NCBI GenBank assembly: GCA_013416795.1
Contig: RQSC01000018.1
Coordinates: forward strand, 326,170-338,697
DNA length: 12,528 nt
Direction: 5' to 3'
Source: Prasinococcaceae sp. CCMP 1430
Lineage: Eukaryota; Plantae; Prasinodermophyta
Shown here: in pieces, positions 1,997-7,091 of the stretch
Layout of the letters: each line of letters opens with the position of its first letter
Numbering within the stretch: the first letter of the stretch is position 1
Translations under genes and position numbers: made by a program
Notes under the pieces: generated by a model
Seen by the model: only the letters and a program-made list of their open reading frames with translations
Databases searched by the model: none
Told to the model about the DNA's origin: nothing

Positions 1997-3904
1997 GGGG
2001 CGCGCGGCCCGGCCGGGCTGGGCAGCGTGCGGCGCGCGGCACAGCGAGCGGCCGTGCCGCGTCTGTGCCTGCACGCCCACATGCGCGGGCACGGCGGGTG
2101 TGTCAACACCGTCGCGTGGGACGAGTGCGGGGAGGCGTTGCTGTCGGGGTCGGACGACCTGTCGCTTTGCGTCTGGCGCGCGGCGGACCTCACGCTGCGC
2201 GCGCGCGCGCGCACCGCGCACTCAAACAACATATTCTGCGCGCGCTTCGTGCCCGGCAGCGGCTGCGCACGCGCGGTCAGCTGCGCTGCCGACGGCGCGG
2301 TGCGCCTCGTGCACCTGCCTGCGGACGGCAGTAGCATCGGGAGCCCTGGCGGCATGCGAGGCGGCGATTCGAGCGACGAGCTCATCGCGCAGTGGGACGG
2401 CATGCTCATGAAGTTCGCATTCGCGCCCGGGAGCTCGGACGTGTTCGTGACGACGCAGCAAGACGGCGCCGTCCGCTGCTACGACCTGCGCGCGAGGCTG
2501 CGCGCAGCCAACGGCGCGGGGGCGCTGGCCTCGCGGCCGACGACGCGACGGCGCCACGTCAACCTCATCGGCGGAGCTGAAGAGGAGGGCACGGGGGGCG
2601 GCCTTCGCTCCATCTCGACGGTGTCGACCTCGGACGTGTGCTTCGACCCGATGCGCCCGGAGACGATGGCCGTCGCCTCGGACGCGGACCACGTCGTGCT
2701 GTACGACATACGGAGGGCGGGCGAGGTAGCGGCTATCCACCCGAGGGATTGGTCCAGTGGGAGCGGCGCAAGCGCAGACACCGGACTTGAGGGCCTCGCT
2801 GCCACCTCGGCGCGCATGCTGCAGCCGGCGGGGACGCTGGGCTGCCACACGGAGGGAGTGTCAGGCATAGACTATGACTCCCGGGGCAGGCTGCTCATCA
2901 GCTACCGCGGGGGGCACATGTACGTGGTAGACACCCGCGCTGCGGGACGCGGCGTCCCACAGCCGCGCGAGGACAGATGGGCGGGCGGTAGTGGCAGTGG
3001 CGGGCGCGAGACCGGAGGACCGAGTCCCGATAGTGGCGAAGGTGGAGGCGACGAGGACCCCCAAGAGGAGCTGGGCGGACCCGGAAACAACGACCGCGAA
3101 GGGGAGGACGAGGAGGACGAGGGTGACCTGCTTAGCACGGCTGCACTCGAGCGCATGGTGCGCGCAAGTGACGAGGCCACCATGGATGTCTTCGTGCGCC
3201 TCGTGCGAGAGCGACAGGCGAAGCTCAGGCGTCGGCAGCTCAACAAGTGCGAGACGCACTTCGAGTCCGAGCTCAAGGGGCATCTCAACCGACGCACCTT
3301 CCTCAAAGAGGCGCGGTTCTTCGGCGAGGGCGAGTACGCCGCCTGCGGCTCGGACTGCGGCCACCTCTTTGTTTATGAAACCCGCAGCGGCAAGCTGCTA
3401 CGCCGCATCCCGGCGGACTCGAGCATCGTGAACTGCGTCGCGCCGCACCCGCGAGGGCTGCCTATTTTGGCCGTCTCAGGCATCGACGACGATTGGCGCG
3501 TGCTCGGACCGGGCTCTGCGCACGCGGTGCCGCCACCTGAGGGGGTCTCGGTGGGTGATATTGCAGAGCTTAGCGCGTCGTCCGAGTCGCACCGCCTCGA
3601 GCGCGCGAGCGTGGCCACGCCGCTCGCGCAGCCCGGCGGTGCGGCGAGCTGTGACGCGGGCGTCGTGTTGGGCAGCCGCATCATCACTCGACGTCGCGCC
3701 GACATGAGCTTGCTCGGAGATTCGAGCGATGACTACGGTGGCTCGGACTCAATGGACGAGGACTACGACACGGACACGGACGAAGAGGAAGACGACGACG
3801 CAGACACAGACACAGACACGGAGTTGTCCGATCGCCCCGACGAGCACTCAGACGCCACAGACACTGAGAGCACCGGCACAGACACGAGTGCGGAAGACAC
3901 CTGA
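1997..3904 (+). CDS. WD40-repeat protein of the DCAF6/DCAF8/WDTC1 family (putative CUL4-DDB1 substrate receptor), 5' end in the gap
   Basis: The frame is open from the gap to TGA at 3902-3904. Family-type motifs: GHGGCVNTVAWDECGEALLSGSDD, HSNNIFCARFVP, YDLR/YDIR (WDxR-like), and the C-terminal block KGHLNRRTFLKEARFFG..AACGSDCGHLFVYE...ADSSIVNCVAPHP..PILAVSGID. Acidic insert and acidic tail. Confidence 0.85.
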   Translation, partial: GARGPAGLGSVRRAAQRAAVPRLCLHAHMRGHGGCVNTVAWDECGEALLSGSDDLSLCVWRAADLTLRARARTAHSNNIFCARFVPGSGCARAVSCAADGAVRLVHLPADGSSIGSPGGMRGGDSSDELIAQWDGMLMKFAFAPGSSDVFVTTQQDGAVRCYDLRARLRAANGAGALASRPTTRRRHVNLIGGAEEEGTGGGLRSISTVSTSDVCFDPMRPETMAVASDADHVVLYDIRRAGEVAAIHPRDWSSGSGASADTGLEGLAATSARMLQPAGTLGCHTEGVSGIDYDSRGRLLISYRGGHMYVVDTRAAGRGVPQPREDRWAGGSGSGGRETGGPSPDSGEGGGDEDPQEELGGPGNNDREGEDEEDEGDLLSTAALERMVRASDEATMDVFVRLVRERQAKLRRRQLNKCETHFESELKGHLNRRTFLKEARFFGEGEYAACGSDCGHLFVYETRSGKLLRRIPADSSIVNCVAPHPRGLPILAVSGIDDDWRVLGPGSAHAVPPPEGVSVGDIAELSASSESHRLERASVATPLAQPGGAASCDAGVVLGSRIITRRRADMSLLGDSSDDYGGSDSMDEDYDTDTDEEEDDDADTDTDTELSDRPDEHSDATDTESTGTDTSAEDT

Positions 3905-4001: not shown

Positions 4002-7000
4002 ATGCCATCGCGCGCGCTCTGCCAGCGCGCCGCTTTTTCCAGCCTGCCGTCCTCGCGAGTAGTGGCGGGGCTGTTGCGCGCCACTGCGGTGCCAGAGGCG
4101 GCCGCCGGCGCGCGGCGGGCGCGCCCAGGCGCCGTCGACCTCTTCTGCGCGGTGACGGGCTCGGGCGACCGCGCGCTCGCGGAGCGCCTGCTCACCGACG
4201 CGGGAGGCGACGCCAACGCCGCCGCGGACGCGTTCTTCCGCCGGGAAGGGGTGGAGGCCGCCAAGTCGGCCCTGCGCGGGGTGGGGGGCACGCTCGTCCT
4301 CGGCAGCACGCAGCGCGTGGTGAGGGGCTCCGGTATCGAGCGCGACGCTGAACGCGAGGCCAGCGCGCTTCGGGGGCTCGCTGCCCCGGGTCGCGGCGCG
4401 CCGGGAGCGCACGCCGACGCCCAGCGCGGATGGGCTCATGCCGTGCTGCCGGCGGAGCTGCGCGCCGCGGGATTCTCAGCGCTGCGTGAGTTCGCGGACG
4501 ACGTGGCCGAGCAGTGCGCCTCCGACGCCGCGGCTAACGACGCGCTGCTGCGCGCCGTCGCCGCGAAGTCCCCGCGTGCGCTCTACTGCGACTCGGCGTT
4601 TCCAGCCGGTGCGGCCTCCATCGACGGCGGCGGCAGCGACGGGGGAGAGCACCACACGCCACCACAGCCGCCGGCCTGCCGCTGCGGCGACGGCCAGCCG
4701 GCTGCATGCAAGCGCGTGAGCAAGGACGGCCCGAACCAGGGGAAGCTGTTCTACTGCTGCGCCCGTGAGCTCTCGGCGGAGCGCTGCGGGTTTTTCGCGT
4801 GGGCGCCTCGCGGCGCTCGCCCGAGCGGGCCGCAGCGCGCGCAGGCCGAGCGCGTGTGGCGGCGCTGTTCGCCGCCGCTGTTCAGGCTCGCAGCCGCGCG
4901 CGGGCCGTCCGCGGATGACGTGAGGCAGGGCTCGGTGGGGGACTGCTGGTTCGTCAGCGTGCTCGCTGTGCTCGCGACGCGTCCTTCGCTCGTGCGGATG
5001 CTGTTGCCTCAGCCCAGCGCCGCTGCTGCAGTGGGCGCGCACCGCGTGCGCCTTTTCATCGACGGTCACTGGCGCGAGCTTTTGCTTGACGACAAGTTTC
5101 CTTGCACAGTCGCGCAGGGGCACAGATTGGCCTACGCCAAGGCTGCTGGCGCAGAGGGCGACCAACTGTGGGTGCCCCTTCTCGAGAAGGCGTACGCGCG
5201 CGCCCACGGCAGCTATTCGGCCATCTCGGGGGGGTGGATGGCTGAGGCCATGCTGGACGTCACGGGGTGCAGCTGCGAATCCGTGTGGTTCCATGAGAAA
5301 GGCTTCGACTTTCAGCTCACGTGGGCTCGCATGCTGAGCTGGGCGGACAGTGGCTTCATGCTCGCCCTCGCCACCGGCGCGGGGGGCGCACAGCTACGCA
5401 AGACTGGGCTCGTCGGCGGCCACGCGTACAGCGTCCTGGAGGTGCGCGAAATCACCGACGCCAGGCCCTCGCGACAGACCAAACTGTCTGCGTTCTTCGC
5501 GGGATCCTCCAGTGAGCTGACCGGTAAGGGCAAGGAGAAGGCGGACGCAGCGGCGGGCGCGCGCGGCCGTGCGGACGCGGAGGTGCCCGAAGGCGGTGCG
5601 GTGGCGGCACGCGCAAAACGTATGCGGGTGGACGATGGGGTCGCAAGCACTGTCGACCTCACGACAGAGTCGGCCTCTGACGACGACTGCATCGTCGTCT
5701 CCGACACGAAAGCGGCACATGCTGGCGTTGTGGATGCACGCACCCGCGGTGATGCAGAGCTTGCGAAGGCGCTTCAACGCGAGGAGGGGCACGGCCTCGG
5801 AGATGCTGACGTGGTGTGCGTGGGGGTTGCGGAGGCGCCGGCGTATTCGTTCGAAGACGAGGTGCTTCGGCTCGTGTCGATACGCAATCCGCACGGAAGG
5901 GGCACCGGTTTCACTGGCGACTTCGGGCGGAAGAGTGCCGTGTGGAACGACAAGCTGCGCGCAGTGCTCGGGGGCGCATCCAGAACGGCCCGCAGCGATG
6001 GCAGCTTCTGGATGACGTACGAGGACGTCGTGAAGCATTTCGTCCTGCTTGACTGCTGCCGAGTGCCGCGTGGGCCCTTTTTCTCGGGCTCGTTCGACGT
6101 GACCATCGAGGCCGCGCGCACAGACTCGGGGTCGTCCCTGGTTCTGCGCGCGCTCGGCGGGTTGCGCGCGCCTGTCCAAGTCGCGTCTGTCCAGCCGACG
6201 AAGAGGAGCAGGATGGGCGAATCGCACTGGTACGTTCCTTCCGGGCTTGCGTACGGGGATGGCGCGGGCCAGGGCCTGACTGCCCGAGCCCACGGCGCGG
6301 ATCGCGTGGCATCGCACAGCGTCATGGTGTCTGAGGTCCCCGTGTGCATCTCGGCGTTCTCGCTGCACACGCGCGTTGGCAAGAGCGCATCCCTGGTGCT
6401 CCGCGTGGTCTCTCCAGTACCTCTCGCGGTGCGCGAGGTGCCGTGCGCGCCGCGCGAGCCGCTGTGTCTGGCGTTCGCGCGCGCCGCCATCGGCGAGGCG
6501 AGCGGCAACGGCCAAGGCGCTTCGTCCGGCGCGCGCGTGTCGAAACGGCACTACCTGGGCGCAGGCTCGATGCTCGCGTGCGTGGGCACGGCCGCCGACG
6601 GCGATGCCACGCTGGTGGCCGTCAACGCGTCGGCGTCCGAGCGCCTGTTTCTGCGCCTCGCGATCTCGGCCAAGTCCGGGTCGGTGAAGAGGGGGCCTGG
6701 CGCGCGGCAGCCCGTGCTGTGCGAGGACGGTTCGTGGGCCGTCTGCGTTCCCCCAGGGGCCTGCCGCGTCGTCGCCAGTGCGGCGGCTCTGTCGACGTGG
6801 GAGTGGGCGTTCGAGTACAGGTACCAGCGCGAGCGCGCTTCGGGCGGCGCGTGGCCCGCGCCGACGAACGACGGCGCGTGGGCGCAGGCGCCGGCGCCAG
6901 CGGCACATCGCCGCCGCCGAGGCCGCCGCCGGCTTCAGGCCCGAGGCGCGCGGGGGCTACCGGCGCGGCTGCGCGGGGGCCAGGTGCGTCGCGGCGTAGC

Positions 7001-7091
7001 GTGGCGGGCGCCAGAGGGAAGGGGGTTGGGGGGAGAGAGGAGGCGAGGGCGGGCCCCCCCCACACACACACACATCCCTTGTTGTACATAA
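4002..7091 (+). CDS. Calpain-family (CysPc, SOL/CAPN15-like) cysteine protease with UBA-like domain, GRF zinc finger and PIP/SIM/MIU-bearing insert
   Basis: Long ORF from ATG at 4002. CysPc motifs: YCDSAFP (4584), VWRR (4854), QGSVGDCW (catalytic Cys 4944-4946), WVPLLEKAYA..HGSY, GHAYSVL (His 5421-5423), IRNPHG (Asn 5886-5888), FWMTYED (6006). A domain-III/SOL-like region follows. The exact 3' end is uncertain. Confidence 0.9.
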   Translation: MPSRALCQRAAFSSLPSSRVVAGLLRATAVPEAAAGARRARPGAVDLFCAVTGSGDRALAERLLTDAGGDANAAADAFFRREGVEAAKSALRGVGGTLVLGSTQRVVRGSGIERDAEREASALRGLAAPGRGAPGAHADAQRGWAHAVLPAELRAAGFSALREFADDVAEQCASDAAANDALLRAVAAKSPRALYCDSAFPAGAASIDGGGSDGGEHHTPPQPPACRCGDGQPAACKRVSKDGPNQGKLFYCCARELSAERCGFFAWAPRGARPSGPQRAQAERVWRRCSPPLFRLAAARGPSADDVRQGSVGDCWFVSVLAVLATRPSLVRMLLPQPSAAAAVGAHRVRLFIDGHWRELLLDDKFPCTVAQGHRLAYAKAAGAEGDQLWVPLLEKAYARAHGSYSAISGGWMAEAMLDVTGCSCESVWFHEKGFDFQLTWARMLSWADSGFMLALATGAGGAQLRKTGLVGGHAYSVLEVREITDARPSRQTKLSAFFAGSSSELTGKGKEKADAAAGARGRADAEVPEGGAVAARAKRMRVDDGVASTVDLTTESASDDDCIVVSDTKAAHAGVVDARTRGDAELAKALQREEGHGLGDADVVCVGVAEAPAYSFEDEVLRLVSIRNPHGRGTGFTGDFGRKSAVWNDKLRAVLGGASRTARSDGSFWMTYEDVVKHFVLLDCCRVPRGPFFSGSFDVTIEAARTDSGSSLVLRALGGLRAPVQVASVQPTKRSRMGESHWYVPSGLAYGDGAGQGLTARAHGADRVASHSVMVSEVPVCISAFSLHTRVGKSASLVLRVVSPVPLAVREVPCAPREPLCLAFARAAIGEASGNGQGASSGARVSKRHYLGAGSMLACVGTAADGDATLVAVNASASERLFLRLAISAKSGSVKRGPGARQPVLCEDGSWAVCVPPGACRVVASAAALSTWEWAFEYRYQRERASGGAWPAPTNDGAWAQAPAPAAHRRRRGRRRLQARGARGLPARLRGGQVRRGVAWRAPEGRGLGGERRRGRAPPTHTHIPCCT
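4131..4238 (+). other. UBA-like (UBA_4-type) domain within the calpain
   Basis: AVDLFCAVTGSGDRALAERLLTDAGGDANAAADAFF fits the F..vTG......A..lL......l..A...FF pattern of the N-terminal UBA-like domains of p47, DCN1 and TDP2. Confidence 0.7.
4677..4802 (+). other. GRF-type zinc finger within the calpain
   Basis: CRCGDGQPAACKRVSKDGPNQGKLFYCCARELSAERCGFFAW matches CxC...V.K.GpN.Gr.Fy.C......C.FF.W. Confidence 0.85.

What the first reader, a model, noticed from the sequence alone, without database searches (positions are those of the whole stretch)
4002..7091. Calpain built like a replication-coupled DNA-protein-crosslink (DPC) protease
Seen: one ORF combines an intact calpain triad with a UBA-like domain, a GRF zinc finger, a PIP box, an NLS-like motif, SIM-like motifs and an MIU-like motif. 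Established: GRF fingers of NEIL3, APE2 and TOP3A bind ssDNA. DPC proteases pair a protease with DNA-, PCNA-, ubiquitin- or SUMO-binding modules: SPRTN (PIP, UBZ, SHP), Wss1 (SIMs, SHP), GCNA (SIMs), FAM111A (PIP), Ddi1 (UBA). I know of no calpain-fold member of this group. Inference: this is a nuclear, possibly DNA-activated protease acting at forks or DPCs, a convergent class of genome-maintenance protease. GRF-calpain fusions may already appear in protist domain surveys, but I know of no functional assignment.
Basis: partly seen in the sequence, partly recalled or inferred. Interest (0 to 1): 0.92.

Follow-up and report, generated by a model that had tools for sequence, protein, structure and literature searches.

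The report
Algal calpain with conserved PCNA-docking motif
This green-alga gene encodes a calpain protease that carries a single-stranded-DNA-type zinc finger, a ubiquitin-binding domain and a PCNA-binding motif conserved across diatoms and red and green algae. It therefore looks like a replication-fork protease of a fold not previously linked to DNA repair, though no experiment yet shows this.

Summary
The ORF at 4002-7091 (+), from Prasinoderma coloniale, encodes UBA_4, a GRF zinc ribbon and a calpain core with an intact Cys315/His474/Asn629 triad, followed by two C2-like beta-sandwiches. The GRF is an insert inside subdomain PC1. A 132-residue disordered loop between His and Asn holds a PIP box, an NLS-like motif, two SIM-like motifs and an MIU-like motif.

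The UBA_4~zf-GRF~calpain architecture is already published (Zhao 2012; Rawlings 2015), with no function assigned.

What I found in no paper is this:
- A canonical PIP box sits about 18 residues after the catalytic His in 49 of 138 divergent family representatives, and is degenerate in 26 more. It reaches diatoms, Chloropicon and Rhodosorus.
- The consensus is G-x-Q-x-K-[LIV]-T-[DE]-[FY]-F.
- Ubiquitin- and SUMO-binding elements recur at different positions in different lineages.
- The residues of the classical calcium switch are missing.

APE2 is a precedent for pairing a PIP box with a Zf-GRF.

The last 62 codons of the ORF are out of frame relative to relatives, which also carry 11 more bases near 6902.

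The parts
4002..7091 (+). ORF as read (1029 codons plus stop). It is homologous to relatives from 4002 to 6902 in one frame with no intron.
4131..4247 (+). UBA-like domain (Pfam UBA_4), aa 44-82. Helical in the model, pLDDT about 80.
4500..6068 (+). Calpain catalytic core (CysPc, PC1 plus PC2), aa 167-689, carrying two inserts.
   Evidence: calpain-1/-3/-9 cores, Z 34-35, rmsd 2.4-2.9 A, model 167-689 aligned to calpain-1 33-354
4671..4805 (+). GRF zinc ribbon, aa 224-268, inserted inside PC1 after the F-x-D-x-x-F-P motif (aa 194-201). The residues matching those whose mutation abolished APE2 ssDNA binding are kept as G247-K248 and R261.
   Evidence: PMC5861430
4944..4946 (+). Catalytic Cys315
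5421..5423 (+). Catalytic His474
5886..5888 (+). Catalytic Asn629 (in RNPHG; the Trp that follows in classical calpains is His here)
5460..5855 (+). 132-residue insert in the beta-hairpin between the His and Asn strands, aa 487-618, mostly disordered.
   Evidence: strands 475-485 and 621-628; pLDDT below 50 for aa 501-616
5475..5498 (+). PIP box QTKLSAFF, aa 492-499, with a short helix at 495-499 at the base of the loop. Conserved at this position across the family.
5613..5630 (+). NLS-like basic patch AKRMRV, aa 538-543. The 52%-identical relative has KKKRR at the same place.
5649..5705 (+). Two SIM-like motifs, TVDLT (aa 550-554) and DDDCIVVSD (aa 560-568). Both are kept in P0002.
5751..5786 (+). 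MIU-like helix DAELAKALQREE, aa 584-595. The same motif sits in the same loop in P0002, P0033, P0037 and P0040.
6060..6443 (+). First C2-like (CBSW) beta-sandwich, aa 687-814.
   Evidence: mu-like calpain domain III, Z 10.2, rmsd 2.8 A, 120 aligned; calpain-7 distal C2L, Z 9.7
6456..6851 (+). Second beta-sandwich, aa 819-950. Its nearest folds are a Leishmania hypothetical protein and SMP-1.
   Evidence: 1r75, Z 9.1, rmsd 3.0 A, 101 aligned; 2fe0, Z 8.0, rmsd 3.1 A, 97 aligned
6901..6999 (+). Conserved C-terminal tail (ends CVAA plus stop) in frame +1, identical to P0001. The ORF frame leaves it at about 6902, where the relatives carry 11 more bases than the window.

Best explanation
The gene encodes a non-classical calpain (CysPc-C2L-C2L) of the published Zf_GRF-CysPc subfamily. 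I propose that it is a nuclear protease tethered to PCNA. The proposed steps are these. The PIP box at the base of the His-Asn loop docks the enzyme on PCNA. The GRF zinc ribbon inserted in PC1 binds single-stranded DNA at forks or gaps, and may also touch PCNA as the APE2 GRF does. The UBA, MIU-like and SIM-like elements select ubiquitylated or SUMOylated proteins stuck on DNA. The calpain core then cuts them, under the control of these contacts rather than the classical two-site calcium switch. In effect it would be a calpain-fold counterpart of SPRTN or FAM111A, built on the APE2 logic of recruitment by PIP and activation by GRF. Shown here: the domains, the triad, the fold, the insert positions, conservation of the motifs and loss of the calcium-switch residues. 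Inferred: every binding event, the localisation, the substrates and the activation mode.
For: The fold and the position of the GRF inside PC1 come (Z 34-35).

The PIP box sits 17-21 residues after the catalytic His in 49 of 138 representatives, with 26 more degenerate. Column counts are Q 86/117, hydrophobic 105/109, aromatic 90/106 and F 66/94, with T-[DE] favoured at positions 5-6 as I recall for the strong PIP boxes of p21 and Cdt1. Named carriers span diatoms, Chloropicon, Rhodosorus and Prasinoderma.

The motif lies at the edge of a variable, disordered insert. It is absent from a 42-row clade with short loops, so the fold does not need it.

Ubiquitin-binding modules were acquired repeatedly: UBA_4 in 20 of 97 members, plus CUE, UBA_HYPK, UBA_8, UIM, UIM_2 and RanBP zinc fingers. 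Extra nucleic-acid modules also occur: zf-CCHC, GRF_2 and Smr. UIM-like motifs number 125 against 4.3 in shuffles, and SIM-like motifs 155 against 44.

The residues matching those whose mutation abolished ssDNA binding by the APE2 GRF are kept. The calcium-switch residues are lost family-wide: R104 becomes A/P, E185 becomes Q and E333 becomes T.

APE2 pairs a PIP box with a Zf-GRF that binds ssDNA and PCNA (PMC5861430). Known DPC proteases pair a protease with PIP, UBA/UBZ or SIM elements (PMC7782752).
Against: - No binding, localisation or activity data exist for any family member.
- PIP-like motifs are promiscuous and can bind other partners.
- The conserved G-x-Q flank hints that part of the motif could be a structural hinge. 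I could not inspect model coordinates to see whether F498 and F499 are buried.
- About a third of the family lacks the motif.
- No SHP, VIM, APIM or UBZ motif was found.
- The SIM, UIM and MIU counts rest on regular expressions with a crude shuffle control.
- GRF, zf-CCHC and Smr could equally point to RNA.
- The first 42 residues look like an organellar presequence if they are translated.
- Many family sequences are metagenomic gene predictions.
Confidence: 0.45

Rival explanations
1. It is a PCNA- or chromatin-associated regulatory protease. It makes limited, calpain-style cuts in specific replication, licensing or repair factors for cell-cycle control, and is not a general remover of crosslinked proteins.
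For: Calpains typically perform limited, regulatory proteolysis (established knowledge). The PIP box often has the T-D form that I recall from p21 and Cdt1. The PIP box, NLS-like patch and ubiquitin- and SUMO-binding elements fit this reading as well as the DPC one.
Against: An ssDNA-type GRF inserted in the catalytic subdomain suggests sensing of DNA structure rather than of one protein substrate. The basic residue at +4 that I recall as needed for a CRL4-Cdt2 PIP degron is not consistently present. No substrate is known.
Confidence: 0.25
2. It is a ubiquitin-guided protease acting on RNA-protein complexes or in general cytosolic quality control. The PIP-like motif would then bind a partner other than PCNA or serve as a structural hinge.
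For: The APE2 paper describes Zf-GRF as a motif of proteins in DNA/RNA metabolism (PMC5861430). Some members add zf-CCHC, CUE or Smr modules; from memory, CUE plus Smr recalls the ribosome-collision nuclease Cue2. The G-x-Q flank is more conserved than a typical short linear motif.
Against: The column pattern matches the PIP consensus at exactly the four defining positions and varies elsewhere. The motif lies next to a disordered, basic, NLS-like segment. The nearest solved GRF relatives are the DNA repair enzymes NEIL3 and APE2.
Confidence: 0.12
3. It is an ordinary calcium-activated cytosolic calpain whose extra motifs are incidental.
For: The core superposes best on calcium-bound calpain cores. 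D106 and D331 equivalents are kept.
Against: The R104-E333 pair and E185 are replaced family-wide, and E302 and D309 are also lost in this protein. The site assignments are from my memory of the calpain-1 core structures. The motifs are conserved across distant lineages. AlphaFold2 often returns the closed form regardless.
Confidence: 0.05
4. It is an organellar protease acting on plastid or mitochondrial DNA, targeted by the Arg/Ala/Ser-rich first 42 residues.
For: Residues 1-42 have only one acidic residue (E32) and are disordered.
Against: The annotated model of the same species starts just before the UBA domain. Relatives from Ostreococcus, Ectocarpus and the 52%-identical P0002 have no such extension. 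PCNA and SUMO are nuclear.
Confidence: 0.03

Closest known systems
Zf_GRF-CysPc calpains of protist surveys (Zhao et al. 2012, PMC3563603; Rawlings 2015, PMC4631099: Q012Z6_OSTTA and C1MTG3_MICPC, UBA_4~zf-GRF~pC2)
   Same: Same domain order and same family. Ostreococcus tauri, Ectocarpus, Rhodosorus and Durusdinium proteins are direct sequence relatives.
   Different: Those papers list the architecture only. None of the papers my searches found mentions a PIP box, loop motifs, the GRF as an insert in PC1, or a DNA-linked function.
Calpain-7 / PalB (non-classical calpain, CysPc plus tandem C2-like domains)
   Same: A catalytic core followed by two beta-sandwiches. The first matches the distal C2L of human calpain-7 at Z 9.7, rmsd 2.9 A, 114 aligned.
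   Different: It has no MIT domains. It has UBA and GRF instead, plus a 132-residue loop insert.
APE2 (PIP box plus Zf-GRF exonuclease)
   Same: It pairs a PCNA-binding PIP box with an ssDNA-binding GRF. The GRF residues whose mutation abolished ssDNA binding align with conserved residues here.
   Different: The catalytic domain is an EEP nuclease in APE2 and a cysteine protease here. Here the GRF is inside the catalytic domain and the PIP box is in a catalytic-domain loop.
SPRTN, Wss1 and GCNA (DPC metalloproteases)
   Same: A protease combined with DNA-binding, PIP, ubiquitin-binding or SUMO-binding modules (PMC7782752).
   Different: The fold and catalytic class are unrelated (SprT/WLM zinc metalloprotease against papain-like cysteine protease). 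No SHP, VIM or UBZ motif was found here.
FAM111A (PCNA-bound serine protease at forks)
   Same: A PIP box together with DNA binding and a protease domain. FAM111A is proposed to remove protein obstacles ahead of forks.
   Different: FAM111A is a serine protease and, as I recall, an animal protein. No homology.

Membership tests
Calpain (MEROPS C2, CysPc) | Peptidase_C2 profile match above the curated cut-off | tested here: met
   178 bits against a cut-off of 23.8
Calpain (MEROPS C2, CysPc) | Cys-His-Asn catalytic triad | tested here: met
   C315, H474 and N629 align with the calpain-1 and calpain-5 triad. Across 142 relatives H is invariant, C is present in 141 and N in 137.
Calpain (MEROPS C2, CysPc) | Two-subdomain PC1/PC2 fold | tested here: met
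   Predicted model against calpain cores: Z 34-35, rmsd 2.4-2.9 A, about 300-315 aligned
Classical calcium-switched calpains | Calcium-site and switch residues of the core (R104, D106, E185, E302, D309, D331, E333 in calpain-1 numbering, from memory of the core structures) | tested here: not met
   A304, D306, Q388, G636, R643, D666 and S668 in this protein. Family-wide there is no R104, E185 is Q in 97 of 142 and E333 is T in 91 of 142.
Zf_GRF-CysPc calpain subfamily | GRF zinc ribbon N-terminal to the catalytic Cys, and grouping with the published members | tested here: met
   GRF at 42.7 bits against a cut-off of 25.9. The Ostreococcus tauri member is among the best hits. GRF is found in 85 of 97 scanned members.
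Calpain-7 / PalB type | Tandem C2-like domains after the core | tested here: met
   aa 687-814, Z 10.2 and 9.7. aa 819-950 is a second sandwich, Z 9.1; its assignment as C2-like is weaker.
Calpain-7 / PalB type | N-terminal MIT domains | tested here: not met
   No MIT hit; UBA_4 instead
PIP-box PCNA ligands | Q-x-x-[LIVM]-x-x-[FYW]-[FYW] in an accessible segment | tested here: met
   QTKLSAFF at aa 492-499. Mean pLDDT is 63 for aa 491-500, next to a disordered loop. Burial of the aromatic residues could not be checked.
PIP-box PCNA ligands | Motif conserved in orthologues | tested here: met
   49 canonical and 26 degenerate of 138; column pattern; tree
PIP-box PCNA ligands | Physical binding to PCNA | not testable with these tools
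   No complex prediction or assay was available
SPRTN/Wss1-type DPC proteases | SprT or WLM metalloprotease domain with HExxH | tested here: not met
   Only the calpain protease domain was found; the fold is calpain
SPRTN/Wss1-type DPC proteases | p97-binding SHP or VIM motif, or a UBZ finger | tested here: not met
   No regular-expression match
SPRTN/Wss1-type DPC proteases | DNA-dependent cleavage of crosslinked proteins | not testable with these tools
   Needs biochemistry
APE2-like PIP plus Zf-GRF pairing | Both modules in one protein, with the GRF residues needed for ssDNA binding kept | tested here: met
   APE2 G483-R484 and R502 align with G247-K248 and R261 (alignment; residues from PMC5861430)

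The most novel reading that the evidence does not exclude
GRF-calpains are a convergent, calpain-fold class of DNA- and PCNA-dependent proteases that clear ubiquitin- or SUMO-marked proteins from replication forks. The class would be ancestral to much of Archaeplastida and SAR. PCNA docking on a loop between the catalytic His and Asn, together with ssDNA binding by a zinc ribbon inside PC1, would replace calcium as the switch that aligns the active site.
Probability: 0.3. Interest if true: 0.9.

Novelty: new variant of a known kind. Interest (0 to 1): 0.72.

Why it matters
Known DPC and fork-clearing proteases are metallo-, serine or aspartyl enzymes; none has the calpain fold. The role of the widespread GRF-calpains in algae, diatoms and dinoflagellates is unknown.

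A PCNA-docking motif fixed next to the active site, an ssDNA-type finger inside the catalytic domain, and repeated independent gains of ubiquitin and SUMO readers together give a concrete, cheap-to-test hypothesis for a whole protease subfamily. They also suggest a non-calcium way of switching a calpain on.

The ecologically dominant phytoplankton groups that carry it include genetically tractable species, both diatoms and Ostreococcus.

Tried and rejected
- **Plasmodium calpain as a characterised relative.** A 2026 review says the GRF configuration occurs in Plasmodium. Other papers describe Pf-calpain as calpain-7-like and nucleolar. I did not treat it as the same family and did not test it.
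- **PIP degron.** The basic residue at +4 is not consistent across members.
- **Other motifs.** No SHP, VIM, APIM or UBZ motif was found.
- **CaaX prenylation of the conserved CVAA tail.** The 52%-identical relative ends in CVA, so this is not conserved.
- **TDP2 UBA similarity.** E = 1.1, not significant.
- **Organellar presequence.** Weak; see the rival explanations.
- **Neighbouring ORFs.** Only an upstream WD40 gene has a Pfam match; the rest have none and say nothing about function.
- **Minus-strand ORFs across the gene.** These were taken as by-products of 70% G+C.
- **The 142-row alignment.** It was too large for the Pfam scan and for structure prediction, so subsets were used.
- **Earlier notes of the scan.** A word search found nothing on SPRTN, Wss1 or PCNA in this genome.
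Full report
**The sequence and its source**

The window is about 70% G+C. One long ORF runs from 3987/4002 to 7091 on the plus strand. Its 90%-identity protein cluster contains the EukProt entry for Prasinoderma coloniale. That annotated model (P0207) is 99.8% identical to window 4119-6821, so the window comes from this prasinodermophyte green alga.

The protein aligns collinearly with relatives from 4002 to 6902, with no intron. The only neighbouring ORF with a family match is an upstream WD40 gene at 2027-3904. Minus-strand ORFs across the gene are what 70% G+C produces by chance.

**Check of the observation**

Pfam finds three domains, all above their gathering scores:
- UBA_4 at aa 44-82
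- Zn_ribbon_GRF at aa 224-268
- Peptidase_C2 in two stretches, aa 282-486 and about 617-695

The PDB sequence search returns calpain-5, -1, -9 and -3 cores, and the GRF domains of NEIL3 (E 4e-14 for the domain alone) and APE2.

Across 142 relatives His is invariant, Cys is present in 141 and Asn in 137.

The five short motifs are all present:
- PIP QTKLSAFF, aa 492-499
- NLS-like AKRMRV, aa 538-543
- SIM-like TVDLT, aa 550-554
- SIM-like DDDCIVVSD, aa 560-568
- MIU-like DAELAKALQREE, aa 584-595

Each appears in 1-2% of shuffles of this protein, and all four motif types together in none of 20,000.

**Anatomy**

An AlphaFold2 model built with a 52-row alignment has pTM 0.74.

*The catalytic core.* The model superposes on solved calpain cores at Z 34-35, rmsd 2.4-2.9 A, over about 300-315 residues. 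Model residues 167-689 match calpain-1 residues 33-354. The catalytic domain therefore starts at aa 167, before the GRF.

*The GRF insert.* The GRF is an insert inside subdomain PC1, placed just after the family's F-x-D-x-x-F-P motif at aa 194-201. This confirms another note on the same window (s1-389937).

*The loop insert.* A second insert, aa 487-618, sits in the beta-hairpin formed by the strand after His474 (475-485) and the strand leading to Asn629 (621-628). It is disordered (pLDDT below 50 for aa 501-616) apart from a short helix at 495-499 inside the PIP box and a helix at 582-594 over the MIU-like motif.

*The C-terminal domains.* A separate model of the C-terminal region has pTM 0.82. 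It shows that aa 687-814 is a calpain C2-like (CBSW) sandwich. It matches mu-like calpain domain III at Z 10.2, rmsd 2.8 A, 120 aligned, and the distal C2L of human calpain-7 at Z 9.7. Residues 819-950 form a second sandwich whose nearest folds are Leishmania 1r75 (Z 9.1) and SMP-1 (Z 8.0).

The overall architecture is UBA, then CysPc carrying a GRF insert and a loop insert, then C2L, then a second beta-sandwich.

**What is already known**

The fusion is published. Zhao et al. [quoted passage not shown] Rawlings 2015 lists UBA_4~zf-GRF~pC2 for Ostreococcus tauri Q012Z6 and Micromonas C1MTG3 (PMC4631099).

No function is assigned. A 2026 review only folds these proteins into a cytokinesis hypothesis. 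Full-text searches combining calpain with PCNA, PIP box or DNA-protein crosslink found nothing relevant. A review of DPC proteases does not mention calpain.

**The family and the PIP box**

A profile search of 1.84 billion cluster representatives returned more than 150 family members at E below 1e-105.

- In 49 of 138 members with a recognisable core, a canonical Q-x-x-[LIVM]-x-x-[FYW]-[FYW] lies 17-21 residues, nearly always 18, after the catalytic His. Another 26 have a degenerate G-x-Q-x-x-hydrophobic version at the same place.
- In the 142-row alignment the columns under window residues 492, 495, 498 and 499 read Q 86/117, L/I/V/M/F 105/109, F/Y/W 90/106 and F 66/94.
- Positions 493 and 494 vary, although K is common at 494. 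Positions 496-497 favour T-[DE].
- This is the PIP-box pattern, with the T-D preference that I recall for the strong PIP boxes of p21 and Cdt1.

Named carriers of the canonical motif are diatoms (Epithemia, Fistulifera, Cylindrotheca, Chaetoceros, Mayamaea and others), the green alga Chloropicon primus, the red alga Rhodosorus marinus and Prasinoderma. Ostreococcus, Ectocarpus and the chlorarachniophytes have degenerate forms.

On a FastTree of the core, with loop columns excluded and rooted on a calpain-15-like sequence, the motif occurs in the earliest-branching clades inside the main 132-row group. It is missing from one derived 42-row clade with short loops, which includes the dinoflagellate Durusdinium. 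Support on many forks is modest. The simplest reading is an ancestral motif lost once on a large scale and eroded sporadically. Because that clade folds without it, the motif is not required by the fold.

**Ubiquitin, SUMO and nucleic-acid modules**

Of 97 members scanned, 85 have a GRF and 20 have UBA_4. Others carry CUE, UBA_HYPK, UBA_8, UIM, UIM_2 or RanBP-type zinc fingers, and extra zf-CCHC, GRF_2 or Smr domains.

The PIP-less clade instead carries two or three C-terminal UIMs and an acidic-flanked hydrophobic SIM.

Regular-expression counts over 160 proteins, compared with shuffles, are:

| Motif type | Observed | Shuffle mean |
|---|---|---|
| UIM-like | 125 | 4.3 +/- 2.1 |
| SIM-like | 155 | 44 +/- 6 |
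| MIU-like | 16 | 1.4 |

The shuffle control is crude, and a few SIM hits fall in folded strands.

In this protein's closest distinct relative (P0002, 52% identity) the PIP box, basic patch, both SIM-like motifs and the MIU-like motif are all kept while the spacers differ. The MIU-like motif recurs in the same loop in P0033, P0037 and P0040. SIM-like motifs occur in the loops of about eight other representatives. Ostreococcus has its acidic SIM-like motif at the C-terminus instead.

Ubiquitin and SUMO readers are therefore a recurring but positionally mobile feature, which is how short functional motifs tend to behave.

**Calcium**

I took the calcium ligands and the R104-E333 switch of the calpain-1 core from memory of the published core structures. 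Using the alignment, this protein has A304, D306, Q388, G636, R643, D666 and S668 at the positions of R104, D106, E185, E302, D309, D331 and E333.

Family-wide, R104 is never Arg, E185 is Gln in 97 of 142 and E333 is Thr in 91 of 142. The classical cooperative calcium switch is not conserved.

**Mechanism proposed**

APE2 is a direct precedent for the module pair. Its PIP box recruits it to PCNA, and its Zf-GRF binds ssDNA and the PCNA C-terminus and promotes activity (PMC5861430). The APE2 residues whose mutation abolished ssDNA binding, G483-R484 and R502, align with G247-K248 and R261 here.

Known DPC and fork proteases pair a protease with PIP, UBA/UBZ or SIM modules.

I therefore propose a nuclear calpain docked on PCNA through the loop PIP box. 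It would sense ssDNA through the GRF in PC1, be directed to ubiquitylated or SUMOylated proteins on DNA, and be controlled by these contacts rather than by calcium. Both inserts sit in the catalytic domain, one beside the His and Asn strands, so allosteric control is plausible but unshown. Every binding step, the localisation and the substrates are inferred.

I rate the reading as a DNA-linked, PCNA-tethered protease that clears proteins stuck on DNA at about 0.45. The rivals are:
- a regulatory protease for specific PCNA-bound factors (0.25)
- an RNA or cytosolic ubiquitin-guided role, with a PIP look-alike (0.12)
- an ordinary calcium-activated calpain (0.05)
- an organellar enzyme (0.03)

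**Gene-model problems**

Relatives P0001, P0211 and P0002 end with a conserved tail. In the window this tail is intact and identical to P0001, but it lies in frame +1 at 6901-6999. The ORF frame leaves it at about 6902, and the relatives carry 11 more bases there. The annotated P. coloniale model bridges the spot with a predicted intron to the final CVAA. The last 62 codons of the ORF (6903-7088) are thus probably not real protein. Whether this is an assembly error or an allele needs resequencing.

The window also lacks a 54-nt segment that relatives have before the UBA domain and that holds the annotated start codon. The first 42 residues may therefore be untranslated leader.

**Limits**

- Most family members are metagenomic predictions without names, and some are fragments.
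- The motif scans are regular expressions.
- The tree is a FastTree with many weak forks.
- No complex prediction could be run.

**Verdict**

The architecture is already catalogued. The family-wide PIP box in the catalytic-domain loop, the GRF as an insert in PC1, the mobile ubiquitin and SUMO readers and the lost calcium switch are new supporting facts.

Noticed in passing
window 6880-7000: The conserved C-terminal tail (ending CVAA plus stop at 6997-6999) is in frame +1, while the ORF continues in another frame to 7091. Relatives carry 11 more bases at about 6902, and the public gene model bridges the site with a predicted intron. This is either an assembly error or a real frameshift allele.
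   Followed up: partly
window 4100-4135: The window lacks a 54-nt in-frame segment, present in P0001, P0211 and the annotated model, that holds the annotated start codon just before the UBA domain. The first 42 residues of the ORF are Arg/Ala/Ser-rich and disordered, so they could be a presequence or untranslated leader.
   Followed up: partly
window 2027-3904 (+): An upstream ORF of 625 aa with WD40 repeats (weak THOC3/WDR3-type propeller matches). The other long ORFs in the window have no Pfam match.
   Followed up: no
P0004, P0006, P0007, P0008, P0012 (relatives, not in the window): The PIP-less clade, which includes the dinoflagellate Durusdinium, carries a zf-CCHC knuckle, two or three UIMs, an acidic SIM and a basic patch at the C-terminus. 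P0012 adds what look by eye like a ZZ-type and a RanBP-type zinc finger. The ubiquitin and SUMO readers are thus present but relocated.
   Followed up: partly
P0084 and other diatom relatives: One diatom-clade member combines UBA_4, a calpain core and an Smr nuclease-type domain. Several diatom members carry CUE in place of UBA_4.
   Followed up: no
window 5883-5897 (RNPHG): The Trp after the catalytic Asn, which I recall as the wedge residue of calcium-free classical calpains, is His in this protein and in 43 of 142 relatives. These include all 11 aligned members of the PIP-less group.
   Followed up: no
window 4119-4289 (UBA region): The only PDB sequence hit that aligns along the UBA-like region is the N-terminal UBA region of C. 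elegans TDP2, a topoisomerase-crosslink repair enzyme. At E = 1.1 it is not significant.
   Followed up: no
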